DNA from: Isurus oxyrinchus
Taxonomy: Eukaryota
Direction of reading: 5' to 3'
NCBI GenBank assembly: GCA_026770705.1
Contig: JANJGN010000017.1
Span: 22,568,001-22,632,000 of the forward strand
Length of the DNA stretch: 64,000 bases
A program made the translations under genes and the position numbers. Every line of letters begins with the position of its first letter. The stretch's first letter is position 1. Of the stretch, positions 1,153 to 30,465 are shown in pieces. The notes under the pieces were generated by a model. The model did not search any database. It had not been told where the DNA came from and saw nothing but the letters and a program-made list of their open reading frames with translations.

Positions 1153-1305
1153 ATGAGAACATTCGAAGATATTTGATGGGACCACCAGGACCTCCAGGAC
1201 CGCAAGGACCACCCGGGCGCCCAGGTTACGCAACGTTAGAAGGAACGACAAACATGCAGCTCAATTACGGAGACATTGCTACCCGTGTCCGAGATTACAT
1301 GAGGA
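1153..1305 (+). CDS. COL17A1: Collagen XVII-like internal exon A ([21 protein letters not shown]...IATRVRDYMR)
   Basis: ctgcAG acceptor, GTAAG donor, 153 nt, phase 1-1. Matches recalled human COL17A1 segment RQYLMGPRGPPGPPG...YAELSSRILSYM. Confidence 0.88.
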
Positions 1306-1314
1306 GTAAGTGTC

Positions 1315-2283: not shown

Positions 2284-2376
2284 GTTCAGGAATGAGTCTT
2301 GGGGTCCAAGGACCACCTGGTCCTCCTGGCTCACCAGGCTCTGTGTCCAGCAGTGAGTTAATGGCTCTTCTACAAA
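2284..2376 (+). CDS. COL17A1: Collagen XVII-like exon B ([30 protein letters not shown])
   Basis: cAG/GTAAG, 93 nt, phase 1-1. Resembles human [28 protein letters not shown]. Confidence 0.88.
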
Positions 2377-3250: not shown

Positions 3251-3379
3251 CCTCTTCCTTTCGGAGAATTCTCGGTCAACCTGGCCCTCCTGGGCCACGG
3301 GGTCTGCCAGGACCGGTTGGACCTCCTGGTCTCGGAGGTGGAAACTTCCGCATTGAAGATGTTGTTTCCCACATTCAAT
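3251..3379 (+). CDS. COL17A1: Collagen XVII-like exon C (SSFRRILGQPGPPGPRGLPGPVGPPG...RIEDVVSHIQ)
   Basis: tttAG/GTAATT, 129 nt, phase 1-1. Resembles human SEFRGIVGPPGPPG...SVEDLSSYL. Confidence 0.85.
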
Positions 3380-3682: not shown

Positions 3683-3811
3683 TGATTGGTGCCTGTGTGC
3701 ATTGCTGTTTGTGTGTGCTGTAAACTGATTGGTGCCTGTGTGCAGTGCTGTTTGTGTGTGCTGTAAACTGATTGGTGCCTGTGTGCAGTGCTGTTTGTGT
3801 GTGCTGTAAAC
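3683..3811. repeat. 43-bp tandem repeat, 3 copies
   Basis: CTGATTGGTGCCTGTGTGCAGTGCTGTTTGTGTGTGCTGTAAA repeated. Confidence 0.9.
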
Positions 3812-3916
3812 TCCTCAGCATTAGGGTGCTAGCAGTGGCTCTGAGCATTCTCACTGCTCCATCACCATTGTATTAGTCCAGTGTCACCACTAATCACAAT
3901 GCCTTTGTGCTTCTAG

Positions 3917-4042
3917 CTTCTGGTTATAGTATTGCAGGCCCTCAAGGGCCCCCAGGACCACCGGGACCACCAGGAACCGGAGGCGGTTTATATCCTGAAG
4001 ATCGGCAACGACTCAAGACTGAGATTATCGATTATTTCTCAA
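3917..4042 (+). CDS. COL17A1: Collagen XVII-like exon D ([19 protein letters not shown]...RLKTEIIDYFS)
   Basis: ctAG/GTAAG, 126 nt, phase 1-1. Not in the ORF track, read by eye. Resembles human ...SFRSELISYLT. Confidence 0.87.
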
Positions 4043-4064
4043 GTAAGTGTCAATTTCAATCCCT

Positions 4065-4285
4065 AAAATAAAAGCAAATACTGAGGATGATGGAAATCTG
4101 AAATAAAAACAGAATGCTTGAAAAACTCAGCAGGTCTGGCAGCATCTGTGGGGAGAGAAACAGAGTTAACATTTTGAGTCCAGTATGACTTCTTAACAGG
4201 CATAAAGACTTGAAACATTAACTCTGTTTCTCTCTCCGTAGATGCTGCCAGACCTGCTGAGTTTTTATAGCATTTTCTGTTATTT
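4065..4285. mobile_element. Penelope-derived inverted-repeat element
   Basis: CTCAGCAGGTCTGGCAGCATCTG arm and its reverse complement. Same family at ~24290-24445, 40885-41000, 52960-53060 and 56243-56463. Confidence 0.7.
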
Positions 4286-5283: not shown

Positions 5284-5388
5284 GTGATAGAATGAGACCA
5301 TACATCACTGGACCAGCAGGACCTCCAGGACCCCCTGGCCACATTGTATATTCTGAAGTAGCTCCACGACTCGCTCAATATATGAAAG
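5284..5388 (+). CDS. COL17A1: Collagen XVII-like exon E (DRMRPYITGPAGPPGPPGHIVYSEVAPRLAQYMK); last exon seen with Gly-X-Y
   Basis: cAG/GTAGG, 105 nt, phase 1-1. Resembles human PDVRSFIVGPPGPPG...YNELAVRVSESM without the long Gly/Ser insert. Confidence 0.85.
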
Positions 5389-11960: not shown

Positions 11961-12492
11961 ATTTTTGGCCCCATGTGATATCCATATGAGACCATACTTG
12001 ATCCCTGTCTGGTCATAAAATGTCCAAATGTTTATTTTTTTATTTGTTCAAATGATGGCCAGAAGCATAAAGATTGAGCAAAGTATATTCTATCCAATCA
12101 TTTCTTAATCATTGACAAATCCACAGGGGGGCAATTATCCTTCATAAAAATATATAATTAGTGTACAATCTCGAGCAGATCAAGAATAGTAATCCCTTTG
12201 GCTGATGAAGAATTCCAACTTCACCTTGACTTGTTCGAGAATCAATTTTCAATCTCTTTGAAGGAAGACATTTTCAGGGGAAGGTTACAGCATTATACAT
12301 ACAGGGAGCTACACACAATTCACAATGTGTACAGCAGGGAATCTCGCTCTCTCTAAACTATCCCCTTTTGTTAATGAATGAAATTAAATGAACCACTTTG
12401 CTCTTGGGATCAGCGTCTGATCTTTGCAAGTGAATCAGCCGAAATCACCCACTGCAAAACCACATTTTCTGACATTGGACTTGTTGTTTCAG

Positions 12493-12606
12493 ATACTGGG
12501 CTGATTGATACCCGCACCATCACCACTTTGGGTCCTGGACATCGCAGAGTGTTCTGGCAAGATGGAACAAGTAGAAATGACACAGAGTTGGAGGAGCACA
12601 TGAGGG
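12493..12606 (+). CDS. Non-collagenous exon F of the COL17-like gene (DTGLIDTRTITTLGPGHRRVFWQDGTSRNDTELEEHMR)
   Basis: tttcAG/GTAGG, 114 nt, phase 1-1, open frame. Shares the WQDGT..ELEE motif with exon J. Confidence 0.75.
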
Positions 12607-13034
12607 GTAGGACCATGAATTAGCACTGGTATAGTGTGTGTATGTTTATTTCCCAATCCTTTAATCTCATTGGTTAAGGAGAGAGACTGTTTATCCTGTT
12701 TTTCACCCAGCCCCCAGATGTCCCTTGCTGTCCTCGCTGCCTCGCTATCAGCTCACATTCCAGCAACTTTGTGGGCCACATTTTTAAAAACAGATGCATG
12801 TAATTGTTAGCCTGATTAAAGGAGAACATTATGAGATGCCCCTTTCTAGCAAAATTAGGATGCTTGGTCACACTGTCTACATCCCTTGTGTCTCACTGAT
12901 GCTGCTGTGACACAGGACAAACATTGATATAGACAAGCGATCACCTGCACCTTTTTTATAAATCAGGTCATCATCCAATTTACCACAGCAATGGGACAAT
13001 ATCTGGTAAATGCTTTTCATCATTGCCTCTCTAG

Positions 13035-13169
13035 ATAATGGATGGACTGGACACACGTCACACAGTTCATCCCGACACTCATCAAAACCTGGGGAATCTG
13101 GCAGTTTTGTGTTTGACTGGGAGAAAGCGTTCAACGGGAACAGGACAGCATATGAGGAATACCTGCGAG
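13035..13169 (+). CDS. Non-collagenous exon G (DNGWTGHTSHSSSRHSSKPGESGSFVFDWEKAFNGNRTAYEEYLR)
   Basis: ctctAG/GTGAG, 135 nt, phase 1-1. Paralogous to exon H. Confidence 0.8.
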
Positions 13170-14299
13170 GTGAGAAGTCAGATTTTTACAGGATTTAATG
13201 GGGTTGTACAGGATCCCCAGGATTGTATGGGGTCCCCAGTATTGGAAGGGATCCCCAGATTTTGTGGTGTTTCATTGATAATCTTTGGATGGAGATTCTG
13301 CTGCTTCCCCCCACCCCCAACACTCCACCATCTTCCAACTAAGTCCAGGGCAAGAGAGCTTTCGGGCAGCCTTCCCCCAGAAGCCAATTGGGACCGATAA
13401 GTGGGCCTCATCCTACTGCCAGTGGTATTCAACCAGCAGCAGGTGGGGGCTCACCATCCAGGGGGGCTCCTCAGCAGACCCTGTCGGCTTGTGGCTTTGT
13501 TGGGGGAGGGGGTCCTTCCGTCACAGGCACTCGGGAAGAAGGAAGCCTACAGGAAGCCACTCTGGCTGCTCTTGCTATTGCTTTTTATTCAGAAAAGGGC
13601 GTAAGGATAAGCTGAGCAACTACATGCCAGTCAGCTTAACCTTGGAGGTGGGAAAGCTTTCAGAAGAGATAATCTAGCACAAATTTAACAAGTCACTTGG
13701 ATAAATATGGATTAATTAAGGAAAGTCATCACAGATTTATTGAAGACAAATCATGCTTAACTAACTTGAATTTTTTTGATGAGTTGACAGAGAGGTTTGA
13801 TGAGGGTAGTGCAGTTGATGTAGTGTACATGGCTTTCCAAAAGGTGTTTGACATAACATACATAACAGCCTTGTCAGCAAAGTTAAAGCTCACGAAATAA
13901 AAAAGGACAGTGGAAGCTTGGATAAAATGGTGGAGGTGGATACAATCAAAAGGAAATTGGATAATTATTTGAAGAGAGAAAAATTGCAGGGCTGTGGGGA
14001 AAGGGCAAGTGAGTGAGGCTAGGTGAGTTGCGCTTACAAAGAGCCAACACGGAACTGATGAGCCGAATAGCCTCTTTCTGTGTTATAACCATGCCATGAT
14101 TCCAAATCGGCATCTCTAACTTCTGACCTCCAGTAACTGCAGTTATCTGACCAAATAATTGAAATTCCAATGGCCTGAAATCCCAATGTGCTTACTTAAT
14201 GACAGTTAAAGGGACCAGCTCTACCACCACAATGTATCACCCAGTGAACGGTTTAATATTGCCGCCCTTGTAACCAGTTTCAACATTGTCCTTTTGTAG

Positions 14300-14422
14300 C
14301 TAAGGGCTGGACTGTGCACACATCACACAGCTCAGGAGGACCTGGAATGTCCAGCTTTCTCGAAGACAATTGGGAGAAAATCTTCAATGGGAACAGAACA
14401 GCATACGAGGAATACCTAAGAG
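14300..14422 (+). CDS. Non-collagenous exon H (AKGWTVHTSHSSGGPGMSSFLEDNWEKIFNGNRTAYEEYLR)
   Basis: ttgtAG/GTGAG, 123 nt, phase 1-1. Shares WEKxFNGNRTAYEEYLR with exon G, with synonymous differences (AAC/AAT, AGG/AGA, TAT/TAC, CTG/CTA). Confidence 0.8.
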
Positions 14423-14579
14423 GTGAGAGCAATGGGATTTGTGGAGGATTCCCAGCAGTGGTGTGGGCTTTCCTGGCATTGGGATTTCCTGATGTTGGGG
14501 GCATTCCCTGGCATTAGGAGGACTCCTTGGGCAATAGGAGATGAGATTAGTCAGCATCCTGTGCATAATCATTTTAGAG

Positions 14580-16120
14580 ACATAGGAACAAAGGAGCATG
14601 AGTAAGCCATTTGGCCCATCAAACTGCTGCACCATTCAATTGGTTCATGGCGGATCATCTACTTCAGCATCATTTTCCTGCACTATCCCTATATCCCTTG
14701 GTATCTTTAACATTTAGGAATCTATCAATTTCTGTCTTGAACAGACTCAATAATTGAGCTTCCTGTTACGAACCCAGCTGATGTAACACTGGGCAAGTCA
14801 GATGCCAGAGTGAAACCTGGCTTGATAGATTCTAACTTTGATTTGTTTTTAGAAACCATGGAGGAAAGTTACTGAACAAATTAACAGGAGTTTACTGATG
14901 CACCTTTAACACAAAGAACAAAGATTATTATTTAAATATGGAAAAATGAACTATATTACACCAGACAAAAAGGTTGGAAAGATCTCAATACAAACACAAG
15001 AAGATGATTTAAAGTCACACTATTCCCTTTAACCCAGCAAAACTCTCACATACACACAACCCCAGTTAAGATTTACCATCAGCTCAACACCAAGGCTTCT
15101 TGCTGGGGCTGGCTCAGTTGCAAACAATTTTCTTCTGGCAGACTTCTGAGCATTTTCCCCAGCTGGTATCTCTCCCTGAGACACCCAAAACCACACTCCA
15201 AACTCACTATTACTTCAACTGCAGAGCAAACACGAGTTCTCGAAACTCAGTTCCCCAGCAGCCTTGCAGTATTTCTTATCAGAGAGCTTAGAGCTCCTGT
15301 CTTCCCTCTCTGAGATACACATTCTGAGCTTCTTTTCTGTCTTTACCTGTGGCTCTGTGCACCTTTGGACCCCTGTCACTAGGGAGCAGCACATTTTTTT
15401 CTACTGTGTTTTGCCCAAAATCACTGAACTACTAACCCCTTTGTAACCCATCTCTTCAAATGCATGATAAAAACAAATCCAGAAAATCTGACCTTTTTGC
15501 TAGGAGGCCCTCCAGACTTCCCAGTACCAAACTCACAAAAAACCTAAATGAAAGTGAAACCATGTTCCACTTTCTTAACACATAAATATAAATCAAACTT
15601 AAAATTATACTTTAGTCCTAACATTCCACAGCCCTCTGGGTTAGAGGATTCCAAAGATTTGCCACCCTCTGAATGAAGAAATTCCTCCTCACCTTAGTCT
15701 TAAATGGCCTTCCCCTTATTCTGAGACTGCATTCACTGCTTCTAGATTCACCAGCCGGGGGGAACATCCTCCCTGCATCTACCCTGTCATGCCCTGTAAG
15801 AATTTTGTAAGTTTCAATGAGATCACCTCTCATTCTGCGAATCTCTAGAGGATACAGGCCCAGTTTCCTCAATCACCCCTCATAGGACAATCCCGCCATC
15901 CCAGGGACTAGTCTGGTGAACCTCTATTGCATTCCCTCTATGGCAAGTGCATCCTTCTTTAGATAAGGAGACCAGAACTGTGCACAATACTCCAGGTGTG
16001 ATCTCACCAAGGCTCTGCACAATTGCAGCAAGACACTTTACTCCTGAAGTCAAATCCTCTGATGAAGGCCAACATACCATTTGACTTCCTAATTGCTTGC
16101 AGCAACTCCATGCTTGCTTT
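14580..16120 (-). mobile_element. CR1 LINE 3' fragment interrupted by a solo LTR
   Basis: ORF 15618..15872 with RRMRGDLIETYKIL. Confidence 0.8.
14764..15623. mobile_element. Solo LTR (860 bp)
   Basis: TGTTA...TAACA termini flanked by a perfect 4-bp target-site duplication TTCC. The host CR1 resumes after it. Confidence 0.8.
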
Positions 16121-16249
16121 TAGTGATGCAGGGTCTCCTGCTCAAAAGTGTCGATGATGCTTCAGTTAGCCAAGAGTTCTCCCTCCGTTAGTCGAAGGTA
16201 TCCCCACCACACCTACTCTCCCCCCACTATAAACTTAGTTTTTTTTTCA

Positions 16250-18660
16250 TATTTATTCACGGGATGCAGGTGTTGCTGGCTGGGCCAGCATTTATTGCTT
16301 ATTCCTAATTGCCATTGGGAAGGTGGTGGTGAGCTGCCTTCTTGAACCGCTGCAGTCCATGAGATGTAGGAACACCCACAGTGCTGTTAGGAAGGGAGTT
16401 CCAGGATTTTGACCCAGCAACAGTGAAGGAATGGTGATATATTTCCAAGTCAGTATGGTGAGTGACTTGGAGGGCAAGTTGCAGGTGGTGGTGTTCCCAC
16501 CTATCTGCTGCTCTTGTAGTCATAGTATTTATATGGCTAGTCCAGTTCAGTTTCTGATCAATGGTAACCCCCAGGATGTTGATATTGGGGGATTCAGTGA
16601 TGATAATGACATTGAATGTCAAGTGGCGATGGTTAGATTCTCTTTTGTTGGAGATGGTCGTTGCCTGACACTTTTGTGGCGCAAATGTTACTTGGCACTT
16701 GTCAGCCCAAGCCTGGATATTGTCTGGATATCTGAGGAGCCATGAATGGTGCTGAACATTGTGCGAACATCAGCCAATATCCCCACTTTTGATCTTATGA
16801 TAGAAGGAAGGTCTTTGATGAAGCAGCTGAAGATGGTTGGGCCAAGGACACTACCCTGAGGAACTCCTGCAGTGATGTCCCGGGCCTGGCCTCGTTGACC
16901 TCCAACAACCACAACCATCATCCTTTGTGCTAGGTATGACTCCAGCCAGTGGAGAGTTTTCCCCATGATTCCCATTGACTCCAGTTTTGCTAGGGCTCCT
17001 TGATGCTACACTTGGTCAAAGGGCAGTCACTATTACCTCACCTCAGGAGTTCAGCTCTTTTGTCCATGTTTGAACCAAGGCTGTAACGAGGTCAAGAGCT
17101 GAGTGACCCTGGCAGAATCCAAACTGAAAGTCAGTGAGGAGGTTATTGTTAAGTCAGTGCCCTTTGGATAGCATTGTTGATGACCCCTTCCATCACTTTG
17201 CTGATGAGCGAGAGTAGATTGATGGGACGGTAATTGGCCGGGTTGGATTTGTTCTGCTTTTTGTGTACAGGACATACCTGGGCAATTTTCCACATTGCTG
17301 GGTAGATGCCAGTGTTGTAGCTGTGCTGGAACAGCTTGGCTAGGGGTGCGGCAAATTCTGGAGCACAGGTTTTCAGTACTATTGCTCGAATATTGTCAGG
17401 GCCCATTGCCTTTGCACTATCCAGTGCCTTCAGCCATTTCTTGATATCACATGGAATGAATGCTGGAGACCTCCAAAGGAGGCTGAGATGGATCATCTAC
17501 TCGGTACTTCTGGCTGAAGATTATTCTGAATGCTTCAGCCTTATCTTTTGCACTGATGTGCAAAACCCCATCTCCCCCATCACTGAAGATGGGGATATTT
17601 GTATAGCTTCCTCCTCCAGTGAATTAAATGTCCACCACCATTCATGGCTGGATGTGGCAGGACAGCAGAGCTTAGATCTGATTCATTGTTTGTTGAATCG
17701 CTTAGCCCTGTCTATCACTTGCTCCTTATGCTGTTTGGCACACAAGTAGTCTTGTGTTATAGCTTCACCAGGTTGACATCTCATTTTTAGGTATGCCTGG
17801 TGCTCCTCCTGCACTCTTCATTGAACCAGGTTGATCTCTTGGCTTGGTGGTAATGATACCGTGGAGGATATGCCAGGCCATGAGATGTCAGATTGTGGTT
17901 GAGTACAATTCTGCTGCTGCTGATGGCCTACAGCGCCTGGTCTTGAGTTGCTAGATCTGTTTGAAATCTATCCCATTTAGCACAGTGTTAGAGATATACA
18001 ACACGATGGGGGGTATCCTCAATGCGAAGAAGGGACTTCATCTCCACAATGACTGTGCGGTGGTCATTCCTACTGATACTGTAATGGACAGATGAATCTG
18101 CAGCAGGCAGGTTGGAGAGGATGAGGTCAAGTATGTTTTTCCCTCACTACCTGCTGCAGATGCAGTCTAGCAGCTATGTCATTTAGGACTCGGCCAGCTT
18201 GGTCAGTAAGGGAGCTACCAAGTCACTCTTGATGATGGACATTGAAGTCCCCCACCCAGGTACATTCTGCACCCTTGCCAACCTCAGTGGTGTTCAACAT
18301 GGAGGAGCATTGATTCATTTGCTGAAGGGGGAAGGGGGGTGGGTACATAGTAAGCAGCAGGAGGTTTCCTTGCCCATGAGACTTCATGGGATCCAGAGTT
18401 GATATTGAGGGCTCCCAGGGCAACTCCCTCCTGATTGTATACCACTAGTACAGCACCTCTGCTGGGACTGTCCTGCTGGTGGGACAGACAATGTCAGGCT
18501 GTTGCTTGACTAGTCTGTGAGACAGCTCTCCCAATTTTGGCACTAGCCTCCAGATGTTAGTAAGGAGGACTTTGCAGGGTCATTGTTGTTTCCGGTGTCT
18601 CAGTTGATAACAGGTAGTTCATCTGGTTTCATTCCTTATTATTGACTCTCGACTGGTTTG
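16250..18660 (-). mobile_element. CR1/L2-group LINE (endonuclease + RT remnants)
   Basis: VGDFNVHH endonuclease motif, KAMGPDNI, NPANYRPI, GVPQGSVLGP. Other 3' fragments at ~2850-3130, 4882-5158, 9468-9660, 22650-22940, 32955-33115 and 39150-39830. Confidence 0.85.
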
Positions 18661-18932
18661 ATGCTTGTTTGTAAGGGTCAACCACATTGCTGTGGGTCTG
18701 AAGTCACATGTAGGCCAGACCAGCAGATTTCCTTCCCTAAAGGGCATTGGTGAACTGGGTGGGAGTTTACAACAATTGATTTATGGTCCTCATTAGACTT
18801 TTAATTCCAGATTTTTGTTGTATTCAAATTCCACCATCTGCTATGGTAGGACTCGAACCTAGTTCCTCAATGCATTATCCTGAGCCTCTGGATTACTAGT
18901 CCAGTGACAATACCACTATGCCACCACTTCCC

Positions 18933-19310
18933 CCCAGTGCTGCACTGTCGGAGGGTCAGTATTGAGGGAGCGCTGCACTGTTGGAGGATCCATAATGAAG
19001 GACTGCTGCACTGTCAGATGGTCAATACTGAGGGAGTGTTGCAATGTCAGACGTGCCTCTCAGGTGAATGTCAAGGAACCCATGGCAATATTTGGAAGAG
19101 GAGTTCTTCCCACTCTTCTGTCCAATATTTTTCTGACAATCAACAGCACTAAAAATATCTTGGCGTTATCCCATTGCTTTTGTGGGGTCTTGCTGTCTAT
19201 ATTTTCTGTATTTCAACAATAAATTGTCCATAATTCATTAACCGCAAGTCCCTTTGGGATGTGTGAGGTTGTGAAAGGTGCAATAGAAATGCAAGTCTTT
19301 CATGTCTTTG
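18933..19310 (+). mobile_element. Deu-domain-type SINE remnant
   Basis: Resembles the recalled Deu/SacSINE-like body and ends in AGAAATGCAAGTCTTT. A related remnant lies at ~33170-33395. Confidence 0.5.
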
Positions 19311-19337
19311 TTCTTAACATTCACTTTTCCTTTCTAG

Positions 19338-19391
19338 TTTACAGTCTGAACCAAGCAGCATCAGGTGGTGAAGCAGATCAGACAGCAGGAG
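19338..19391 (+). CDS. Short linker exon I (VYSLNQAASGGEADQTAG)
   Basis: Strong polypyrimidine tract + tctAG, strong G|GTAAGT donor, 54 nt, phase 1-1, open frame. Confidence 0.6.
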
Positions 19392-19519
19392 GTAAGTCAC
19401 TTTTTTTTTGTTTTTAATGATTGATTTTGTGAATGAAGTTAATCTCATCTATGCTCAAATACAACTGCATTCTGACTGTCACTGTTTCTCACTCTTTCTC
19501 CCTTTCTCTGACTGTCTCT

Positions 19520-19945
19520 GAAAAGCAATTTTAACTTTGTGTAAACTTGACATCACCAAAACCTGGTTGCCTGTGTCTAACACACTGAGTTCCATTCCCC
19601 TATCACCCCTGTGCTCACTGACCTACACTGGATCTCAATCAAGCAACATCTTGGTTTTAAAATTCTCATCCTTGTTTCCAAATCCCTCCATGGCCTCCCC
19701 CCCTCCTAATCTCTGTAATTTCCTCCAGCCTCAAACTCTCTGAGATATCTGCATTCCTCTCATTATGAACTTTTGTGCATTTCTAATTTCTTTAGTTCAC
19801 CATTGGTGGCCTTAAGCTTGACCTTAAGCTCTGGAATTCCCTCCCTAAATCTCTCCACATCTTTACTTTGCTTTCCTCCTTTATGACACTTCATAAAACC
19901 CACCTCTTTGATCAAGCTTTTGATCACCTGAGTTAATATCTGCTT
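19520..19945 (+). mobile_element. L2 LINE 3' fragment
   Basis: Encodes ITPVLTDLHW...FKILILVSKSLHGL, the typical L2 ORF2 end. Confidence 0.75.
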
Positions 19946-20161
19946 AAAAATCTATTCCCTTTACAACTCTAAAGGGGGTGCAGAAGCAGAGGGATATCAT
20001 GTGCACAAATTATTGAAGGTGACAGAACAGCTGGAGAGAGCAGTTAATAAATCATACAGTATCCTGGGCTTTATCAATAGAGGCATAGAGCACAAGAGCA
20101 AGGAGGTTATGTTGAATTTGTACAGGAAACTAGTTTGGCCTCAGCTGGTGTATTGCTCCAG

Positions 20162-23100
20162 TGTTAACTCCATTAATTGTATGTTGAGAAAAAATACATC
20201 TGAAGCCAGCCTGGAACTCAAGACAGGTTTATTTCCAAGCATACAGTGTAAAGATACAAATTTGTCCTATTCCCCTAATGCCCAATGTGAACACCTTTTT
20301 ATACTCTTGTAATGAAGCCCTAATACTTCCCCAGTTGGGAGCAGTTGCTCTTAATTACCAACTTAAAACATGTAATCCATTGCAGCACAACTTCAACATT
20401 AACAGATACCCTTCTCTTTTTAAAAAAATGAAAAACAAGTGCGTTTTCTTTTCAGACAAAAATAAAACTGAAGACAGAGAAATAAGTTTCAAATTTTCAA
20501 AACTCACATCCTGAGTCGTCGGTCTTCTAATACCCCCAATAATTTTTCACTACAAGTGTTCCTTTTGGTGAAACTGTCGGATAACTGATGGCTCATATCT
20601 ACCCATTGGAGCTTAGAGATTTCCTTTTACTTCACCATTTGTTTTAGACTTGTGATATCAATTCGTAATCTTTTTTCACTCCCTCTTCATGGAGTGTACG
20701 TTATCCCAAAGAGATCAATTGTTGATATAACATTCTATTAGGACATGTTCTTTGTCATTTCCCCCATGTAGTATTTCCCCTAATGTTTTAGATAAAAGGA
20801 ATAACATGTCGACCACCTCTACCAATGCGAGAGTCTCTGCAGCCAGGGTGCTCTTTACTACTCACCTTATTTTCTTAGCTTCTCAAGCCAAGGGACAACA
20901 TTTTTCATTTTCACCCATGAGAAATATTATAAAACCTGCTGCACGTAAAAACTTATCAACAAGGTTTGTGTGTGAGGCGTCACTGAACACCATCAATTCT
21001 ACATCTCAGGGTAACCCAAAGATGGAAACTTTAGTACACATTTCTCCATCTTTTAATTTTTTTTTTAATGTTGCATTCACCCATAAGATGTTTGGACAGT
21101 GGAATGTTTCATTATTGTCCTCAGTTCAAGGACATCTAAGCTTTCATCCGGCCCTGTCTATGTGCCCAGCCAATTTAATTGTCCAATTAGACTTTGCAGC
21201 AGATCCGCCTCATCTTTGAAAGCATCGGTATCTCTGTGAGGACCCAGCCCGACTGACTGTCATGGGGCTAACATTTTCTAAATACGATTGTTGGTGCAAA
21301 GTAACCTCAGACCCATAACATTTTGTGATAATGCTGGCCGATCACTATCTGGGACCCCTGAAAACTACCAAATTCCTTCCAACTATCCAACTCCTTCTGT
21401 TTAGCCTCCCGTATAGCTTTATCCCCTAACTTGTTAGTCATTATAAAAACCTCATGGTCATGGGGACTCCTTCTTCTGCTCTTTTGTCATAATGGTTCAG
21501 CATTCACCACTCTACTATGTCAAGCTGCGACCCCGACTTGCCTGTTGAAGTCTGTCTGGGCTCCTACTGTTAAGATTTCCTCTGTACCCCATCTGAGGCC
21601 CTGTCTGCTGTATGCGAATGTGTCCTCACCTGAGATTCATCACCCAACCCATTACTATAACTTGGGTTACTATAACTATATTACTATAACTTCCTTATTC
21701 TCCATTCTTGTACTCTATTTCCCCAGCCCATGGCCTTCACTGCTTGTCCATCATCCTGGACATTCAGCCAATTCCTTTATTTCCTAGTAGGCTTTCCTGC
21801 CCGTCCCACTATTGTTACATCCCTCTAGTTACCTGATCCTTCTGGACAATATGATACCCAGGAACCCATTTTGGACAGTTGACCTCTGAACAAAATAGCC
21901 CCTTTCTGTCTCTCACACTCCCATTTCCTACTGGTATCTTGTCCCTCTTGCTCTGCCCCACGAAACATATAAGTATGTGATGCACATGGTGCTTTGTCAT
22001 CTGCTATCACCAGATTCAAGCTCCCTGTGACCAACACAATTCCTACATGGCAGTCACCATCATCATTCTCAGCGTCAGAATTCTCTGTTTCACATGTTGC
22101 TTCAAAAACACGATCCTTTCGCTGGGGGCAATTCATTGCTTAATGATATTTAGAATCACATTAATAACACAGATTAATCATTCCCCATGCATTTCTCGGG
22201 TTCAAGCACCCTCAGTTGACATCCCAAACCCACTTTTTTGTCTCAATTCTCAAATTGGCTGAAAGTGCGACCTTCTTCAGATCACCTATCAACAACCCAG
22301 TCCTTGTACTGAAATCTATCTAACATTTTGGCGATCTCAAACTTCGGTAACCATGGAGTTTTCCATCCTTCACTTTACAACAGAGTCATTAGTGTTTGAC
22401 AGGAAAGCAGCTGAGAGCGATTGCTTTCCCAAAAGTTTTTTCAGGGTAGTAACCATTTAACCAAGCAACGAGTTTTGCCAGAGAATTGTACCCCCATCAA
22501 AACCAAAAGCCTATTGACCTGAGAAATGAGTGCACAGTCCAGTAATTTGAAAGCCAATTTCAAGGTTAAACTTTTTTGGCCTCTTATATCACTCATCAAA
22601 GTCCATAATGAACTCGTCCGTGGACTGATCATTTGTTGTCTTTTTTTATATTAATTCACGGGATGTGGGCTTCGCTGGCTGGGCCAGCATTTATTACCCA
22701 TCCCTAATTGCTCTTGAGAAGGTGGTGGTGAGCTGCCTTTTTGAATCGCTGCAGTCCATGTGGTGTAGGTACACCTACAGTGCTGTTAGGAAGGGAGTTC
22801 CAGGATTTTGACCCGTGACCAGTGACAGTGAAGGGACAGCAATATATTTCCAAGTCAGGTTGGTGAGTGACTTGGAGGGGAACTTCCAGGTGGTGGTGTT
22901 CCCATTTTTCTGTTGCCCTTCTAGATGGTAGTGGTCATGGGTTGATAAATCTATCAAAAGCTGACCCTGCCTCATATGCTTCCAACAACTGGTAAATCCC
23001 CCTTCAGCATCCAAGTCATCCACATCCATTTCCAAAAATATTTCTGGTAATGTTAAAGCCATACCTTGCTTCCTCTGGGATAAATAGGTAACCCATGTGC

Positions 23101-23370
23101 ACATTTCCACCTTATTCTTCCACTGCTGATATGGTTCAAAGAAAAACCGGTGGATACTCAAAGCTTGCAATTTTGTATTTGTGTTCTGCCACTCTGTACC
23201 TGAAGTTGACAAAACTTCTTGTTTAATGATCAATCACCAGAGCACAATGTTCATCCTCTGCAACCATGTTAAATCCATTAATCGTACTTTGAGGAAAGAT
23301 TGAGTCTGAAGCCAGTCTGTACCTTAAGACAAGGTTTATTTCTAAAATTGCAGAGTAAATACACATGCTC
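20162..23370 (-). mobile_element. Degraded Copia (GalEa-like) LTR retrotransposon
   Basis: LTRs at 20162-20404 and from 23267. PBS TGGTTGCAGAGGATG at 23252-23266, polypurine tract next to 20405, Copia RNase H remnant FSDASH...KKIR*VVKSTLAAETLAL at 20821-21000, gag-like remnant at ~22950-23160. Confidence 0.78.
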
Positions 23371-25201
23371 ATCCTTGGCCATGCTTGCACCCTCCCGTGC
23401 AGTCTGTAGCCCACTGAAGGACTACAGAAGTCAAGATGGCAGAGTGGTCTGATGAGGCCATGAGTAGCAGCGGTTGTAGCAACAGCGAGATCTTGGGCTC
23501 TTGGAGTGTTAGGCAGGGCGGGGAGGAAAGGTATCTTGCCACCTTCACAGTCATCCCAAACTCCTCCTCAGCAATATTAATCTCCAAACCTCATGGACCG
23601 GGTGTGAGTGAGGATGAGCGTGTGAGTTTATGAGTGAGGGCTAGAACCCTAACAGTAGGAGTGAGCTTTATACACAAACGCTACTCTGTGCGGGGACACA
23701 CAGACACAGACACACAAACGTGTCCTATGCCAAAAGACTTATTACCCAATTGGATGATGTTGCATGTCAGCCAAACAGCCATTCCTCCCGCCCCGCCCCA
23801 TCCATTTTCAATAACAAAGAAAATGACAAAAAAAATCTTTTTTAATGTCCCAATTTTTTTCTTCAGGGTTGCACACAGCAGTGTCCTGGAGATTGATCTT
23901 CAATTCCTGGAGACTCCAGGCCAATCCCTATCCCATCTAACTCCCCTGGTGACCAGGACTTGGGGCCTAATCTGTCTCTCTGCTTCTTAAGCGAAAAAGG
24001 CAAAAATACTTTATTAGTTGGCTCTGGCGCTTGATGCTTTTTAAAATTTTGACATTGAGGTTTTTTTGCTCAGCAAGTTACTTATGTTTTCTTCATATCT
24101 TAAATTTTTGTTTGAACTTCATCTTTAATTTTGTGATTACCCAATTGGATGATGTTGCATGTCAGCCAAACCAGATGTCAGGACGTTGCTGTTGGGTTTC
24201 TTGCTGAAGGGGAATGGAAGGCTTACAAGAGTCTGATTGCTTTTTGGAGGATTGGTGAAAGGGGTTGATTTTGCTCCAATAGAAATGGGAAGTGTTGGAA
24301 ATGCTCAAGTATGTCTGGCAGCATATGTGCAGAGACAAACAGAGGTCAGTGAGTTGTCTCCACAGATGCTGCCTGGCCTGCTGAGTGTTTCCCGAGTTTT
24401 TTGTTTATAGTTCAGATTTCCAGCGTCTGCAGTATTTCGCTCTCCTATTATATGATCCATGCTTGGCATTTGTAAATGTGGTTAGTTTCAATATAAAATG
24501 AGAAAATATTTATCACTCAATACAAGGTGTAATTTTTCTGTTAACAACAAAGCCTGCTTGTGTGAATAGAAATAGCACATGATTGCAAGTGAATTGGTTG
24601 GTGCTAATTTATTGGAAGGTTTTGCCATTTTTAAACTTGGAAGTGAAATCAGGAATCATACGCCAATAGAATATGTCACTGTTTGTTCAAGATATTCTCA
24701 TTTGTACATAGGAATGTTGTTTGAGGTGATTGAGGCTTAAGTCTTTTGGATGTTACTGCGTGGATTTTTCATAGGGCCAGTTCAAAGAAATGGAGCTGGT
24801 TGCAAAACGTTAATGACCAAGTTGTGTGCAATTGTCTGACAAAGCTGTGGTTGTAAAGTGTATCATATTGAAACCTGAGCTTTCAATGGGCCTTATAAAT
24901 AGAGGCATAGAGTGCAAAAGCCAAGGAGTTTTGCTAAACCCATATAAAACATTTCAACCTCACTGTGACGTTGGTTCCCAATTCTGGGAACCCAAAGGAT
25001 GTTAGGGGGAGAATTGAATGGAGGGGCAGGATAGATAAGGGGCCTGGAAACAGGTGAAGCACCAAAGCGCGTGATTTCTCTCTCTGGCCCTGCCTATACT
25101 CTGCACTAATGGGCTGCAGGCATGATTGACTGCAGGATATTTATTGAGTCACTGTATATACTGCAGATCAGAATTTGTAAATGTCTCCTGTTTGATTACA
25201 G

Positions 25202-25390
25202 CCGGTCGATCTCACCACACGTCATCCAGCTTCTCCAGCCAATCAGATGGATCCGGAACTCGCAGCATGTCTGAAACTTCACGCAGCTCCTCCAGCCAGT
25301 CAGCTGCTTCTGGATCTTCACATTCCTCAGGAGGAGTTTGGCAGGACGGGACCTACAGGACTGATGCCGAATTGGAAGAGTTGCTAAAAG
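25202..25390 (+). CDS. Non-collagenous Ser-rich exon J (AGRSHHTSSSFSSQSDG...SSHSSGGVWQDGTYRTDAELEELLK)
   Basis: ttacAG/GTGGG, 189 nt, phase 1-1. WQDGT module shared with exon F. Confidence 0.78.
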
Positions 25391-27287
25391 GTGGGAGTTC
25401 TGTCTCACTGTCATGGCTGGTGGTATTGATTTCTCTCTTAGCACACTGTATCCCTGCCCTGTGAGCTGGCTGTGGTTTGTAACCAACAGGTACAGCCCCC
25501 CACCAGCATTAGGTTGTTAGTTAAAGTGTTCTGTATCTAGTGCCAGCCCATTTAAAAAAAAATTATTTGTTCATGGGACGTGGGCTGGCTAGGCCGGCAT
25601 TTATTACCCATAAATGCCCTTGTTCAGAGGGCTTTTAAGAGTCAACCACATTATTGTGGGTCTGGAGTCACATGTTAGGCCAGACCAAGTAAGGACAGCA
25701 GATTTCTTTCCATAAAGGACATTAGCGAACCAGATGGGCTTTTACGGCAATCAGCAATGGTTATATGGTCATTCTTAGACTTTTAATTCCAGGTTTTTAG
25801 TGAATTCAAATTTCACCAGCTGCCGTGGTGAAACCCAGGACCCCAGAGCATTACTCTGGGTCTCTAGAATACTAGTCCAGCGACAATACCACTACGCCAC
25901 TGCCTCCCCTAATGCACCCACTGCTGTAAATCCAGAGCAAGCAGGCCGCTTGAGAAGATCTAGCGGAATATCTGGTTAGGAACAGGGCTGAAGATTATGA
26001 GGATTTGTAAAGGGTGGAGATGATGGAATGCTGTGCAGGGCAGAGTAGTTCCTGATGGACTGTGACCAGGGAATGCAGTGAAATTCATTTCCCCTTCTCT
26101 CATTCCAGCTGACTTCACTCTTCAGTTCATTGACATACAGTGGTCACAAGAATGTGTTTACCATCCTTTGTAATAAGATTATAAGCAGGAATCACCTCAC
26201 TGGTCACCCAGATTAGCAACTGACCAGAACAATGATTACCTCTCTCCACTGCAATAATGAAAGTTAGAATGTATCAATAACAAAATATCTAAATAATAAA
26301 TTAAATGTAATTTCAAAAGCTTCGTTCTAAGCTGCCCGGCTTCACTGAAATCTGAGTCTCTGCAACCCAGGCACAGGTTGGTCCTCTTTAAATTACCAAA
26401 AATATTTCAAGGTGCCACACATAAATAATTAACCCACACATACAAAAGAAACGAGATGGTATGTTGGTTCCAGTGGGGTTGAGAAGTAGGAAGAAGCAGA
26501 ATATTGGACTCTGGAGGATCAGTGGGTCCATTCCACATCAAGTGGACACATGGGCATGTGTGGCGCCGATGGCCTGGGTTTGTACCCGAGACCACTGACC
26601 TGGACGTCCAGGGGTTGAACACTTATCGCTGGGACACTCCTCCGAGTCTTGAAAAATCATCAGGGAATTTTCAAAAATTGTGTTTTATTCATTTTCTTTG
26701 AAAACATTCACAATTAGTTATGAAAGTATTGCATATGGTGGGGCGGGCTTGGGGGTGGGGGCAGGGAAAGAAACTGTTTGACCTGATGGGGCATTTGGAG
26801 GCAGGATCATGTGCTTATCACCTTCAGGAATATGTCCGGGCAGAGTGGTAGCCTAAGATTGCATGAGAGAGGTGAGCATTGGTCAGTCAGGTGGATCAGA
26901 ATGTGTACCTGTACAGGTAGGAAGCTCCAGCACAGTCTGTACAGACTGAGCCTCTCATTGACCAACACTCACTGCTCCTGCCCATTCAGAGACTGAGAGA
27001 GATCCTCCAGCATACCTCTGGGAGCAGGCAAATGTTCATCAGCCTCACAACAGACAGTTACCCTGCACTGGTGACTATAATAATGCCCCCTGGAAACTAT
27101 AATAGACTGCCCCCCCCCTCCCCCAAGGAATGTAATTGCCTCCAATTCATTGGACTACCTGTGAATGAGCTCAGTTTTTCTGGGCTGCACATATCTCCAT
27201 GTGTGATCACCATCTGGGGTGGGGAATAGGCCTGACAACCTGGCTGCCGGGAAGAGATTTGCTGATTTATGTTGATTTCTGTTGCAG

Positions 27288-27377
27288 GGCAAGTCGGGGA
27301 ATCTTATGCCAGATGGCTGTCACACAGCAACCTCGGTGTGCAGTCTGATCAGAACGTAAGGAGACGGAAAGCTACAG
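27288..27377 (+). CDS. Penultimate exon K (GQVGESYARWLSHSNLGVQSDQNVRRRKAT)
   Basis: ttgcAG/GTAAC, 90 nt, phase 1-1, open frame. Confidence 0.65.
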
Positions 27378-27565
27378 GTAACACAGTGAGGCCACATGGG
27401 GAAGCTGGACATTATAGTTTGAGCTGATTTGCTGAGATTTTTATATAGTTGTCCATCCTCTCCTGACCTCTGCCATAGTCCAACCCCCTCCTCTCCTGAC
27501 TCTCAGCCTGATCCTGTTTAGGAAAGGATCAGTGTGTTTTTTAATGAATTATTTATTTTTTTTAG

Positions 27566-27615
27566 GTCAGTCTTCACACAGGAGAACCCGAAAGCGAGCT
27601 CTCGGCACCAAGTGA
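27566..27615 (+). CDS. Terminal coding exon L (GQSSHRRTRKRALGTK*)
   Basis: Poly-T + tttAG acceptor, TGA at 27613-27615. Short polybasic end like human COL17A1 DQVYAGRRRRRSIAVKP*. Confidence 0.7.
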
Positions 27616-28572
27616 TGCAACGACTCATGCGGAGCAGGCTCGAGGGGCTGTACAGCTGACTCCTGCTCCAATTCTTCCAGCTCCAGGCAGTGACTTTGCC
27701 CATATATCACCCTCTTTTTCAGCAGCTTAACCTCGGAAGAAAAATGCACGCAAATTTCTTTTTTGTGCCTTCTGTGATACAGCACATTAATCTGGGGTTC
27801 TAACTACACACAATTATTGTATCCATGGAAAAAGGCAGATAGCGACTGATCTGTGGGAGACTTCGCTGCATGAGGTTCCTTTCTCTATCAGTTCCTGGTG
27901 CATTGCCCCTCAATGCTAGGAATCTGTGAACTACCTTCTGAGTCAGTGGCCACATGGGTCAGAGACGATGCTCCCAATTCTACTGTTCAATGGTCACCAA
28001 ATATTGTTAGAATGTAAGAAATAGGAGCAGGAGTAGGCCGCTCAGCCCATCGAGCCTGCTCTGCCATTCAACACGATCATAGCTGATCTGCCTCAACACC
28101 GTTTTTCCACCTGTGCCCCATGTCCCTTAAATCCATAAAATCCGTCTATCCATCTCAGCTTTATGTTATGCTGGACATTTATAAAGCTCTGATGAACCCC
28201 CGGCTAGTATAATAAGTTCTGGTCAGTACATTTCAGGAAAGATATGAAGGTCCTTGGGAGGGTGCAGAGGGATGAGAGATTTTGGTTACAAGGTTGGGTT
28301 GGAGAAGCTGGGGTTGTTCTCTCTGGAGCAAAGGAGTTTGAGGGGAGATTTGATAAAGATGGACAAGATGATGACAGGTTTAGATAAGGTGGACAAAGAA
28401 AAGCTGTTCCCATTAGCTGATTATGCAAGGGCTAGGGAGACACAGATTTAAGGTTTCGGGCAAGAAATGCAAGGTGAATGTGACAAGAACTTTATACAGC
28501 GAGTAGTAATGACCTGGAACTCGCTGCCCACGAGGACGGTGGAAGCAGAAACAATCACTGATTTCAGAAGGA

Positions 28573-30465
28573 AATTGGATGGGAACTTGAAGGAAATAAA
28601 CTTGCAGGGATATAGGGATCGAATGGGGGAGTGGGACTAACTGGATTGCTTGACAGAGAGCCAGCATGGACTTAATGGGCTGAATAGCCACCTTCTGTGC
28701 CATAAACGACTTTATGACTCTCAAATATTTTCAACGATGAAGCATCCACAACTATTTGGGCTACAGAATTCCAAGGATTCACAACCCTTTGATTGAAGAA
28801 ATTTTGTCTCAGTCCTAATTGGTCAGCCCCTTATCTGAGACTGTTCTAGATTCCCCTGCCAGGGGAAACAGCCACTCAGTATCTACCCTGTCAAGCCCCT
28901 TCAGAATCTTGATCCTTTGACCAGTGAGAAGGAGGCAGTCTCATGCCCATCCCCCATCATGTCCATGTAGCTGACGCCCAACATCAACAGCTCAACAGAA
29001 TTATTTTCTTCAGATTTCCAGCATCCATGGTATTCAGCTTTTCAATTAGAATTCTTGAGAGTTCCAGGGGAAGGGTCATGTACTCCATTTAGGACATTCA
29101 ACAGGTGGATGACCCCCCCTGCCTCCCTCCATCCCGCCCGCCCCCTCCCTCCCCCTCTCCTCCCGCCCCCTCCCTCCCCCTCTCCTCCCCCCTCCCCTGG
29201 ATGTGAAAGTGACTCCTGTAGATCTCAGTGGAGTTGAGGTCAGTTGACATCTTTAACAGACACTGTATCAACAGCCAATAACAGTGAAGCATTAGGTATG
29301 GACCAGCCCCCATCACCATTCTCACATGGCTGTGAATAAGTTAAAGAAGCAGGGCTGTGGGTTAGAGATGCTGACAGCAGAGCCTGCAGTTTTCTCAGGA
29401 AGGAGATAGTTGTCTTAAGGTTGGAGATGGAGAGGGGCAGAGACCATGATTGATGAGCACTGAATGGCCATTGTCCATAGCTTGGGTGGCCCAGAGGCTA
29501 AGAGGAATGATGTGGCGCCTATGCATTCAGTCGCTGTGTTTTGACCCTTCGCAGATTTCAGTTCTTGTGATGTTTCTCTCATCTATCACTGTACTTACAG
29601 GTTACAATGATTCCACTAACCAGCTGACTATTTTACAGCCTGTCACTTAAATTGTAAAATTCTTCTTTTGGAATAAAAACAATGATTTTAAAAAACAAAA
29701 CAAAGTGGATTCCTCCAAAGATTTACTTAACATCTGCCAAATGAATATTCCTCAGTTTAAACTTCGAGCCAGTGCTCACCATCAGCTTTGCTGCTGGTCA
29801 CCACAATCCTTAGTGGAGCCACCCTGACCTTCCGAACAGTCTGACAGTGGAGTCAGGATGGACTGGCAGCTTCTCCTTACCCCGGGGCTGCACTCTGTCC
29901 TCCTCACTAGTCCAAAGTAAATTGGATGCGCGCTCGAAGGAAATTAACTTGCAAGGATAATGGGGGTCGAATGGGGGAGTGGGACTGACTGGATTGCTCT
30001 GTGGGGTGCCGGTATGGCCTTGATGGGCTGAATGGCCACCTTCTGTGCCATAAACAACTTTATGACTCTCAAATATATTCAACGATGAAGCATCCACAAC
30101 CCTTTGGGGTAGAGAATTCCAAGGATTCACAACCCTTTGACTGAATAAATTTTGTCTCAGTCCTAATTGATCAGCCCCTTATCTGAGACTGTTCTAGATT
30201 CCCCAGCCAGGGGAAACAGCCACTCAGTATCTACCCTGTCAAGCCACTTCAGAATCTTGATCCTTTGGCCAGTAAGAAGGAGGCAGTCTCATGCCCATCC
30301 CCCATCATGTCCATGTAGCTGACGCCCAACATCAACAGCCCAACAGAATTATTTTCTTCAGATTTCCAGCATCCATGGTATTCAGCTTTTCAATTAGAAT
30401 TCTTGAGAGCCAGGGAATGGGTCGTGTCCTCCAGTTTAGGTCATTCAACAGGTGCATGACCCACC
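28573..30465 (+). repeat. Local direct duplication (~540 bp; 28573-29115 vs 29920-30465)
   Basis: Both copies share CR1-fragment junctions, downstream non-CR1 sequence and a following poly-C tract. Confidence 0.85.

What the first reader, a model, noticed from the sequence alone, without database searches (positions are those of the whole stretch)
12493..27615. Collagen XVII-like gene whose C-terminal collagen domains are replaced by a novel repeated non-collagenous tail
Seen: after five exons that align with COL17A1, the frame continues through seven exons with canonical splice sites, all entered in phase 1, with no Gly-X-Y runs, giving about 250 aa. The tail is built from His/Ser-rich linkers and two module types, WQDGT-x-R-x-D-x-ELEE (exons F and J) and WEK-x-FNGNRTAYEEYLR (exons G and H), and ends in a polybasic tip. 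Known: mammalian COL17A1/BP180 ends with the COL2 and COL1 triple helices and an RRRRR tip, the region reaching the lamina densa. Inference: this is a lineage-specific collagen XVII variant or paralog with a new, probably glycosylated distal ectodomain and possibly different matrix partners. I do not recognise these modules from any described family.
Basis: partly seen in the sequence, partly recalled or inferred. Interest (0 to 1): 0.85.

Follow-up and report, generated by a model that had tools for sequence, protein, structure and literature searches.

The report
Shark collagen XVII tail without triple helix
The last seven exons of this shark's collagen XVII gene encode a tail with no collagen helix, built from repeated copies of a sugar-carrying motif known from other vertebrates, and this is the normal form in sharks and rays rather than a new gene.

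Summary
Exons F-L (12493-27615) are real, canonical and all phase 1. They encode 251 codons with no Gly-X-Y run. Assembled contigs of four small, RNA-like runs join F|G and G|H. Their loose ends read exon E before F and exon I after H.

This is the collagen XVII gene, and its tail is lineage-specific. It is not peculiar to this species, and its modules are not an unrelated family.

A profile of the four modules found only 4 true relatives among 1.84 billion representatives. All four are elasmobranch. With two more models they are Chiloscyllium, Heterodontus, Narcine, Rhinoraja, Scyliorhinus torazame and Rhincodon. Three are named collagen alpha-1(XVII).

Gecko and teleost models keep COL2-NC2-COL1 and the polybasic tip. 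Shark exon E end plus exon F aligns collinearly with the bony NC3 end, COL2 and NC2, sequon on sequon (hhalign P 1.9e-6; 0 of 40 shuffles reach it).

So the tail is a set of de-collagenised duplicates of the N-glycosylated NC2 unit, COL1 is absent, and the basic tip is kept. No paper found describes it. Outgroups, a second gene copy and dN/dS could not be tested.

The parts
1153..1305 (+). Exon A: Gly-X-Y run plus NC linker of collagen XVII
   Evidence: Gly-X-Y run at 1179-1232. tblastn to P0001/P0006 gives 78% identity over the NC part. AG..GTAAGT, 153 nt.
2284..2376 (+). Exon B: Gly-X-Y run plus NC linker
   Evidence: 84-87% identity to P0006/P0001. 93 nt, phase 1.
3251..3379 (+). Exon C: Gly-X-Y run plus NC linker
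   Evidence: 84% identity to P0006. 129 nt, phase 1.
3917..4042 (+). Exon D: Gly-X-Y run plus NC linker
   Evidence: 95% identity to P0006. 126 nt, phase 1.
5284..5388 (+). Exon E: the last Gly-X-Y run of the gene (5310-5345), plus an NC linker that matches the end of NC3 of bony vertebrates
   Evidence: Its last letters are the loose end read before exon F in X3 and X6. hhalign collinearity.
12493..12606 (+). Exon F: positional counterpart of the COL2/NC2 exon. A G-P-G remnant stands in place of the Gly-X-Y run. Module W..N-D-T..EE.MR carries a sequon.
   Evidence: F|G joint in 4 of 4 runs. Window F against Scophthalmus NC2: z 5.0, 0 of 300 shuffles. hhalign.
13035..13169 (+). Exon G: His/Ser-rich linker plus module W-E-K..N-R-T..EEYLR with a sequon
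   Evidence: Joints on both sides in 4 of 4 runs. Module identical at 15-17 of 17 positions to the best-placed module of the other elasmobranch models.
14300..14422 (+). Exon H: second copy of the G-type unit, with a sequon
   Evidence: G|H joint in 4 of 4 runs; loose end to exon I in X3, X6, X7. Module 15-16 of 17 identical.
19338..19391 (+). Exon I: short Ala/Gly/Ser-rich spacer (18 codons)
   Evidence: Its first 30 letters equal the loose end behind 14422. Matches the spacer of Heterodontus and Chiloscyllium at 8-9 of 17 positions.
25202..25390 (+). Exon J: long Ser-rich linker plus module W-Q-D-G-T-Y..ELEELLK, without a sequon
   Evidence: 74-81% identity to P0006/P0001.
27288..27377 (+). 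Exon K: possible fifth, truncated NC2-like unit followed by a basic stretch
   Evidence: 70% identity to P0001 residues 1507-1536. Weak match of Y-A-R-W-L-S-H-S-N to the Pampus NC2 start (z 3.2, 2 of 300 shuffles).
27566..27615 (+). Exon L coding part: polybasic tip and stop codon
   Evidence: 14 of 15 positions identical to Heterodontus. A polybasic tip is also present in gecko and teleost models.
27616..28620 (+). Probable 3' UTR; its end is inferred, not shown
   Evidence: The first + strand AATAAA after the stop is at 28595. Runs X1-X7 hold 0.24-0.41 of the sampled words of 25100-29000. Contigs run 534-1175 nt beyond exon H.

Best explanation
The stretch holds the last seven coding exons of the shark's collagen XVII gene (COL17A1).

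Shown:
- The exons are spliced onto the last Gly-X-Y exon and onto each other as far as exon I.
- They encode about 250 residues without any triple-helix repeat.
- The same tail, exon for exon, is present in sharks of several orders and in skates and rays. In the small sample seen (one gecko and several teleost models), bony vertebrates have COL2-NC2-COL1 and a polybasic tip instead.

Supported by alignment:
- Exon F is the positional counterpart of the COL2/NC2 exon. The Gly-X-Y run has decayed, while the N-x-T sequon and the following motif remain.
- G, H, J and perhaps K are further copies of that unit, joined by His/Ser-rich linkers.
- COL1 is gone and the basic tip stays.

Inferred mechanism:
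- Collagen XVII trimerises from its N-terminal coiled coil and folds from N to C. The distal helices are therefore not needed to start assembly.
- In elasmobranchs the distal ectodomain would be three flexible arms per trimer. Each arm carries three N-glycan sites instead of one, short helices after each site, Ser-rich stretches like mammalian NC4, and a basic tip.
- The glycans would serve ER exit and surface expression, as human Asn1421 does.
- The linkers and the tip would make the contacts with the basement membrane.
For: Exon structure and absence of Gly-X-Y.

Splicing: F|G and G|H in 4 of 4 runs. Loose ends equal to the end of exon E (2 runs) and the start of exon I (3 runs). Single contigs of 996-2681 nt carry F, G and H.

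Distribution:
- The profile of the 4 modules found 5 hits at E up to 0.001 among 1,835,955,588 proteins. Four are elasmobranch and one is a spurious microbial repeat protein.
- The tail-region search found 3 of 7263 candidates, all elasmobranch collagen XVII models.
- The window's exons E, F, G, H, J, K and L are collinear with them.

Bony vertebrates keep COL2-NC2-COL1 and the basic tip: gecko P0017 and teleosts P0015, P0016, P0018, P0022, P0027, P0113.

Homology of F to COL2/NC2:
- hhalign local Prob 89.6, P 1.9e-6 over 54 columns. The reversed control scores 8.3, and the best of 40 column shuffles scores 22.2 against 32.1.
- The module alone scores 16.0, P 0.0021, with 0 of 60 shuffles reaching it.
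- 25 of 35 best local alignments put the shark sequon on the NC2 sequon.
- Window exon F against Scophthalmus: z 5.0.

Constraint: module cores are 72-85% identical against 43-70% for linkers, for the three models that hold all units. All 4 letter differences listed in related organisms' contigs fall in linkers.

The sequon is present in every F, G and H module listed and in no J module.

From passages of PMC8623354: Asn1421 glycosylation is needed for surface expression, the triple helix is seeded N-terminally, and the Ser-rich NC4 domain is involved in laminin-332 binding.
Against: - An HMM of 24 shark modules scored no bony-vertebrate protein above shuffled controls (best 0.5 bits; shuffles reach 2.7). 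Homology to NC2 therefore rests on collinearity and weak profile similarity.
- Pairwise scores of the F module are mostly weak (z between -0.2 and 4.3).
- Direction of change is not shown. No chimaera, lamprey or hagfish sequence could be reached.
- The run kinds are guesses, and X3 is marked 'probably DNA'.
- The structure model is poor (mean pLDDT 41.6, no residue at 70 or above), so the short helices are only a hint.
- Glycosylation, trimer state and binding partners are untested.
- That human Asn1421 lies in NC2 is my recollection. The passages read do not place it. In the gecko model the N-V-T lies 70 residues from the C-terminus.
Confidence: 0.8

Rival explanations
1. The gene is a paralogue. 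Elasmobranchs would also keep a conventional COL17A1 elsewhere, and this 'collagen XVII-like' copy diverged freely after duplication.
For: Two source names say 'chain-like'. Teleosts have a and b copies (names).
Against: - The N-terminal region search returned one protein per elasmobranch species (3 of 14 hits), and none with another tail.
- The Heterodontus model is named collagen alpha-1(XVII) chain without '-like'.
- The N-terminal region is 56% identical to a snake collagen XVII.
- The database clearly lacks many vertebrate models, so the absence is weak evidence.
Confidence: 0.08
2. The non-collagenous tail is the ancestral jawed-vertebrate state, and bony vertebrates gained COL2 and COL1 later.
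For: Without an outgroup, one change on either branch explains the data equally well (against 19, 22).
Against: - The rest of the gene in sharks is built from the same exon type with an intact Gly-X-Y run.
- Exon F keeps a G-P-G remnant and R-V-F exactly where bony fish have P-G-x-S-R-V-F.
- Teleost b-type models show the same unit duplicated with the Gly-X-Y run intact.
Confidence: 0.1
3. The modules arose anew or from unrelated sequence, and their likeness to NC2 is chance plus a shared N-x-T.
For: The HMM of shark modules finds nothing in bony proteins. There is no Pfam match (0 significant on 7 queries). The Atlas best hit of 0.81 is at chance level.
Against: - Collinear profile alignment through the linker, the decayed run, the sequon and the R-x-Y-G end: P 1.9e-6, with 0 of 40 shuffles reaching it.
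- The module alone beats 60 of 60 shuffles.
- Sequon-on-sequon placement in 25 of 35 pairs within 400-residue targets.
Confidence: 0.07
4. The spliced form seen in the runs is a retrocopy or contaminating cDNA in DNA libraries, and the tail exons are not expressed with the collagen part.
For: No listed run is on record as RNA, and X3 is marked 'probably DNA'.
Against: - Runs of 25-122 million letters cannot cover a shark genome, yet they hold the exons and no unique intron sequence. Depth is 0 in 12 or more of 30 bins in each run, and the intron pieces are 90-95% repeat matches.
- The signal comes from four studies and three organism labels.
- Independent gene models in five other species join the same exons.
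Confidence: 0.03

Closest known systems
Tetrapod collagen XVII (COL17A1/BP180), C-terminal region NC4 to NC1
   Same: Same gene family, and collinear up to the end of NC3. It has the NC2-type motif with an N-x-T sequon, a polybasic last exon, and a Ser-rich segment in the distal ectodomain (gecko model P0017; passages of PMC8623354).
   Different: In the shark:
- There is no COL2 and no COL1.
- The NC2 unit is present four to five times instead of once, with three sequons per chain instead of one.
- The long Ser/Gly-rich insertion before the NC3 end in gecko is absent at that place.
- Ser/His-rich linkers lie between the modules instead.
Teleost collagen XVII models with tandem COL2/NC2 units (Pampus argenteus P0015, Scophthalmus maximus P0018)
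   Same: The same unit (G-L-L linker, short run, W/V-x-G-S-x-G-N-x-T...E-Y-I-K/R) is repeated two or three times before the basic tip. These are the best pairwise matches of shark exon F (z 2.2-5.0).
   Different: Each teleost copy keeps its Gly-Pro-Pro run, and a COL1-like run follows. The duplications need not be shared with sharks. I call these models 'b-type' from my own recollection of zebrafish col17a1b; no call showed it.
RefSeq and other gene models of elasmobranch collagen XVII (XP_043568820.1 Chiloscyllium plagiosum; Heterodontus francisci isoform X2; Narcine bancroftii X3; XP_078268911.1 Rhinoraja longicauda; GCB81111.1 Scyliorhinus torazame)
   Same: The same tail, exon for exon.
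   Different: - Chiloscyllium and Heterodontus have an extra Gly-rich exon between F and G.
- Narcine has the G-H-I-J block twice.
- The S. torazame model lacks exon I.
- The Rhinoraja and S. torazame fragments are named only 'uncharacterized' or 'hypothetical'.

Membership tests
Collagen XVII (COL17A1/BP180) orthologue | Many short Gly-X-Y domains interrupted by non-collagenous linkers, collinear with annotated collagen XVII | tested here: met
   Five Gly-X-Y exons at 1153-5388. tblastn to P0001/P0006 gives 71-95% identity, in order.
Collagen XVII (COL17A1/BP180) orthologue | Type II membrane protein: N-terminal cytoplasmic domain, one membrane span, juxtamembrane coiled coil | not testable with these tools
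   The 5' part of the gene lies outside the window. The full-length shark models that share the tail do have the membrane span and an N-terminal region 56% identical to a snake collagen XVII.
Collagen XVII (COL17A1/BP180) orthologue | Distal triple helices COL2 and COL1 before the C-terminus | tested here: not met
   No Gly-X-Y run of 3 or more triplets with proline on the + strand after 5345. None in the tails of P0001, P0002, P0006, P0007.
Collagen XVII (COL17A1/BP180) orthologue | NC2-type motif with an N-glycosylation sequon | tested here: met
   The sequon is in F, G and H. It aligns on the bony NC2 sequon in 25 of 35 pairs and in hhalign. Only the sequence was tested, not glycosylation.
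Collagen XVII (COL17A1/BP180) orthologue | Arginine-rich C-terminal tip | tested here: met
   Exon L. Same feature in gecko and teleost models. Passage in PMC8623354 on the arginine-rich carboxy terminus.
Collagen XVII (COL17A1/BP180) orthologue | Single copy at the syntenic locus | not tested
   There is no neighbouring gene within the window.
Pfam Collagen triple helix repeat (PF01391), for the tail alone | Match to the Gly-X-Y profile above the gathering score | tested here: not met
   The five tail exon peptides gave no collagen match. P0002 as a whole scored 15.8 bits against a cut-off of 27.2, and only in its upstream part.

The most novel reading that the evidence does not exclude
In elasmobranchs the two distal triple helices of collagen XVII were replaced by an array of N-glycan-bearing NC2 units. 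This array would act as a separate matrix-binding domain with partners of its own, for instance in the basement membrane under placoid scales.

If so, the glycosylated NC2 motif and the basic tip are the functional core of the distal ectodomain in all jawed vertebrates, and COL1 and COL2 are only spacers.
Probability: 0.15. Interest if true: 0.6.

Novelty: new variant of a known kind. Interest (0 to 1): 0.4.

Why it matters
Collagen XVII anchors basal epithelial cells to the basement membrane. Its distal end is where laminin-332 binding, a required N-glycan, and disease mutations and autoantibody targets map in humans (passages of PMC8623354).

Sharks and rays provide a natural deletion experiment. 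Both distal helices are gone, while the sequon motif is multiplied and kept nearly unchanged between sharks and rays, and the basic tip is retained.

This points to which elements of the C-terminus are under constraint. It also gives testable chimeras for work on assembly, secretion and matrix binding. It is a lineage variant of a known protein, not a new system.

Tried and rejected
- HMM of 24 shark modules against 10 bony-vertebrate proteins: nothing above shuffles. I therefore dropped the claim that the module alone is recognisably NC2 by a simple profile. I relied instead on collinear profile-profile alignment with controls.
- The third word-index search, with the gecko C-terminus, was swamped by generic collagens (580 hits, best 120 listed). 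It gave three more teleost models and no chimaera or lamprey.
- Pfam gave no significant family on 7 queries. The weak PTCRA and JHBP rows lie far below their cut-offs.
- Atlas look-alikes were at chance level, best 0.81.
- The AlphaFold model of P0002 with a 5-row alignment had mean pLDDT 41.6. It was not used for a fold search.
Only 4 letter differences from related organisms' contigs were available.
- In the identity table, two sets of rows are misplaced on paralogous modules: S. torazame (which has no E, F or G) and Narcine E and F (outside the last 330 residues used). I did not use them for the core-versus-linker figures.
- Paper searches (listings only, apart from passages of PMC8623354) showed no title or abstract on the C-terminus of shark collagen XVII. 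The library lacks most subscription journals. The zebrafish collagen XVII gene-structure paper is known to me only from recall and from being matched in reference lists. Supplements were not opened.
- I considered and rejected missed collagen exons inside the long introns and a separate downstream gene.
All searches with window sequence were exon by exon.

Full report
**What is there.** The window is eukaryotic, from a shark. On the + strand, five short exons each carry a Gly-X-Y run followed by a non-collagenous linker: A 1153-1305, B 2284-2376, C 3251-3379, D 3917-4042 and E 5284-5388. After exon E, a scan of all six frames finds no further proline-rich Gly-X-Y run of three or more triplets on the + strand anywhere in the 64 kb.

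- F 12493-12606
- G 13035-13169
- H 14300-14422
- I 19338-19391
- J 25202-25390
- K 27288-27377
- L 27566-27612, with the stop at 27613-27615

Each has an AG acceptor and a GT donor. Each has a length divisible by three (L up to the stop) and is entered in phase 1. Together they give 752 nt, or 251 codons. The four module-bearing exons F, G, H and J align as one repeat family.

**Is it transcribed, and with the collagen part?** The search for runs found twelve holders, none on record as RNA. Seven are small runs of 25-122 million letters, guessed as RNA, that hold 0.24-0.41 of the sampled words of 25100-29000.

I laid four of them, from four studies and three coded organisms, on 12300-14600.
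- All four show the joints 12606|13035 and 13169|14300 with GT..AG ends, in single contigs of 217-2681 nt.
- Unique intron sequence has no depth. The pieces inside the introns are 90-95% matches, typical of repeats.
- The loose end before exon F in X3 and X6 reads the last letters of exon E, as printed.
- The loose end behind exon H in X3, X6 and X7 equals 19338-19367, so H joins I.

Caveats: these are assembled contigs, the kind of each run is a guess, and the tool marks X3 'probably DNA'. X1 and X3 match the window without a differing letter. X6 and X7 differ at a few letters and are probably close relatives.

**Where else does the tail occur?** A profile of the four modules was scored against 1,835,955,588 representative proteins. 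It gave five hits at E up to 0.001. One is a microbial repeat protein at E 2.6e-4, which I take as spurious. The other four are elasmobranch:
- a full-length 'collagen alpha-1(XVII) chain-like' of Chiloscyllium plagiosum
- a 393-residue model of the skate Rhinoraja longicauda
- a 142-residue model of Scyliorhinus torazame
- a whale-shark fragment

A search with the tail of the Chiloscyllium protein added Heterodontus francisci (collagen alpha-1(XVII) chain isoform X2) and the electric ray Narcine bancroftii (3 hits of 7263 candidates). tblastn of these proteins on the window places E, F, G, H, J, K and L in order. Exon I, too short for tblastn, matches the spacer of Heterodontus at 9 of 17 positions.

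So the tail is the normal C-terminus of collagen XVII in sharks and batoids. It is already present in public gene models.

**What do other vertebrates have?** A search with the N-terminal region returned 14 proteins. They were the three elasmobranch models, two reptile models and nine teleost models. The C-terminal search added three more teleosts.

Seven of these bony-vertebrate models have readable C-terminal ends: one gecko and six teleosts. Six of the seven share one plan. A linker ends in G-L-L-Q, then comes a short Gly-Pro-Pro run, then a motif with N-V/I/A-T, then a longer Gly-X-Y run and an arginine-rich end. The Leuciscus model has the same plan but stops within the last Gly-X-Y run.

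Two teleost models (Pampus, Scophthalmus) repeat the short run plus motif two or three times, with the Gly-X-Y run intact. No elasmobranch protein with such an end was seen. However, the database plainly misses many vertebrate models.

**Origin of the modules.** Pfam knows none of them, and Atlas look-alikes are at chance level. An HMM built from 24 shark modules does not score bony proteins above shuffles. Taken alone, then, the motif is too short and too changed to be recognised. Three further tests point to the NC2 unit.

1. The stretch made of the linker of exon E plus exon F, taken from four elasmobranch database models, aligns end to end with the bony stretch 'NC3 end, COL2, NC2'.
   - hhalign local gives probability 89.6 and P 1.9e-6 over 54 columns.
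   - The reversed control scores 8.3. The best of 40 column shuffles scores 22.2 against 32.1.
   - In that alignment the shark G-G-S-G-R-H stretch faces the Gly-Pro-Pro run, the sequon faces the sequon, and R-x-Y-G faces R-T-Y-G.
2. The F part alone still beats 60 of 60 shuffles (score 16.0, P 0.0021).
3. The best local alignment of a 25-31-residue F module inside the last 400 residues of seven bony proteins lands sequon on sequon in 25 of 35 pairs. The window's own exon F matches the Scophthalmus unit over 24 residues, including P-G-x-x-R-V-F (z 5.0, 0 of 300 shuffles).

Exon K may be a fifth, cut-down unit, with a weak match to the start of the Pampus unit (2 of 300 shuffles).

I conclude that the tail consists of duplicates of the COL2/NC2 unit that lost the Gly-X-Y run. 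I tested it as described.

The direction of change, decay in elasmobranchs rather than gain in bony vertebrates, is inferred. It rests on the G-P-G remnant, on the intact copies of this exon type upstream in the same gene, and on the teleost repeats. No outgroup could be reached.

**Constraint.** Three models hold all the units: Chiloscyllium, Heterodontus and Rhinoraja. Against them, the 17-residue module cores of the window are 72-85% identical and the linkers 43-70%. The G and H cores are identical at 15-17 of 17 positions to the best-placed module of the other elasmobranch models, including skate and electric ray.

The N-x-T sequon is present in every F, G and H module listed and in no J module. 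The four letter differences listed between the window and contigs of related organisms all change linker residues. That number is too small for a test.

**How it probably works.** From passages of the review PMC8623354:
- The collagen XVII triple helix is seeded by the N-terminal coiled coil.
- N-glycosylation of Asn1421 is required for surface expression.
- The Ser-rich NC4 domain bears a substitution that abolishes laminin-332 binding.
- The very end is arginine-rich.

That Asn1421 is the NC2 sequon is my recollection. The gecko N-V-T lies 70 residues from the end, which fits.

Given N-to-C folding, distal helices are not needed to assemble the trimer. The shark protein would end in three flexible arms, each with three glycan sites, a short helix after each site, Ser/His-rich linkers and a basic tip. 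The helices are only a hint, from a poor model with mean pLDDT 41.6. The tip matches a proprotein-convertase-type or polyanion-binding pattern; that reading is mine.

The steps shown are the gene structure, the splicing as far as exon I, the distribution and the homology. The steps inferred are glycosylation, flexibility and binding.

**Comparison and novelty.** The gene meets the tests for collagen XVII except the one the finding is about, the two distal helices. It is a lineage variant of a known protein. Its sequence is already in public models, three of them under the collagen XVII name.

I found no paper describing the feature (listings only; 52, 2,985 and 14 papers held the terms, none on this by title or abstract among those listed). 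The library does not cover most subscription journals.

I rate it a new variant of a known kind, of moderate interest. It is useful as a natural experiment on which parts of the distal ectodomain matter, but it is not a new system.

**Limits.**
The joined step was left out. One script step that strung peptides together is told under Tried and rejected.
- The joints I|J, J|K and K|L and the poly(A) site are not shown by reads.

Noticed in passing
window 11003-11957: A 36-nt satellite, 26.5 copies, with a 215-nt higher-order period, inside the 7.1-kb intron between exons E and F. It accounts for the strong GC skew there.
   Followed up: partly
window 30587-31406 and 36926-38702: Two more tandem arrays downstream of the gene: 28 nt x 28.9 copies and 20 nt x 88.8 copies. 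The region is GC-rich (0.56-0.60).
   Followed up: no
window 28000-64000: No obvious second gene. The long ORFs are reverse-transcriptase-like LINE fragments and translations of repeat arrays. The window therefore gives no synteny information.
   Followed up: partly
protein P0007 (Narcine bancroftii model), last 300 residues: The block of units G-H-I-J appears twice in tandem. This could be a real duplication or an assembly or model artefact.
   Followed up: no
window 12607-13034, compared with P0001 and P0006: The Chiloscyllium and Heterodontus models have an extra Gly-rich exon between F and G. The window's 428-nt intron does not hold it, and the skate model lacks it too.
   Followed up: partly
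window 19338-19391, compared with P0003: The Scyliorhinus torazame model joins H directly to J. Contigs here join H to exon I. Exon I may be skipped in some species or isoforms, or missed by that model.
   Followed up: no
window 12529 and 13086 (runs X6, X7); 12528 and 12541 (X7): Contigs of related organisms differ from the window only at linker codons of exons F and G. All of these differences change the residue.
   Followed up: partly
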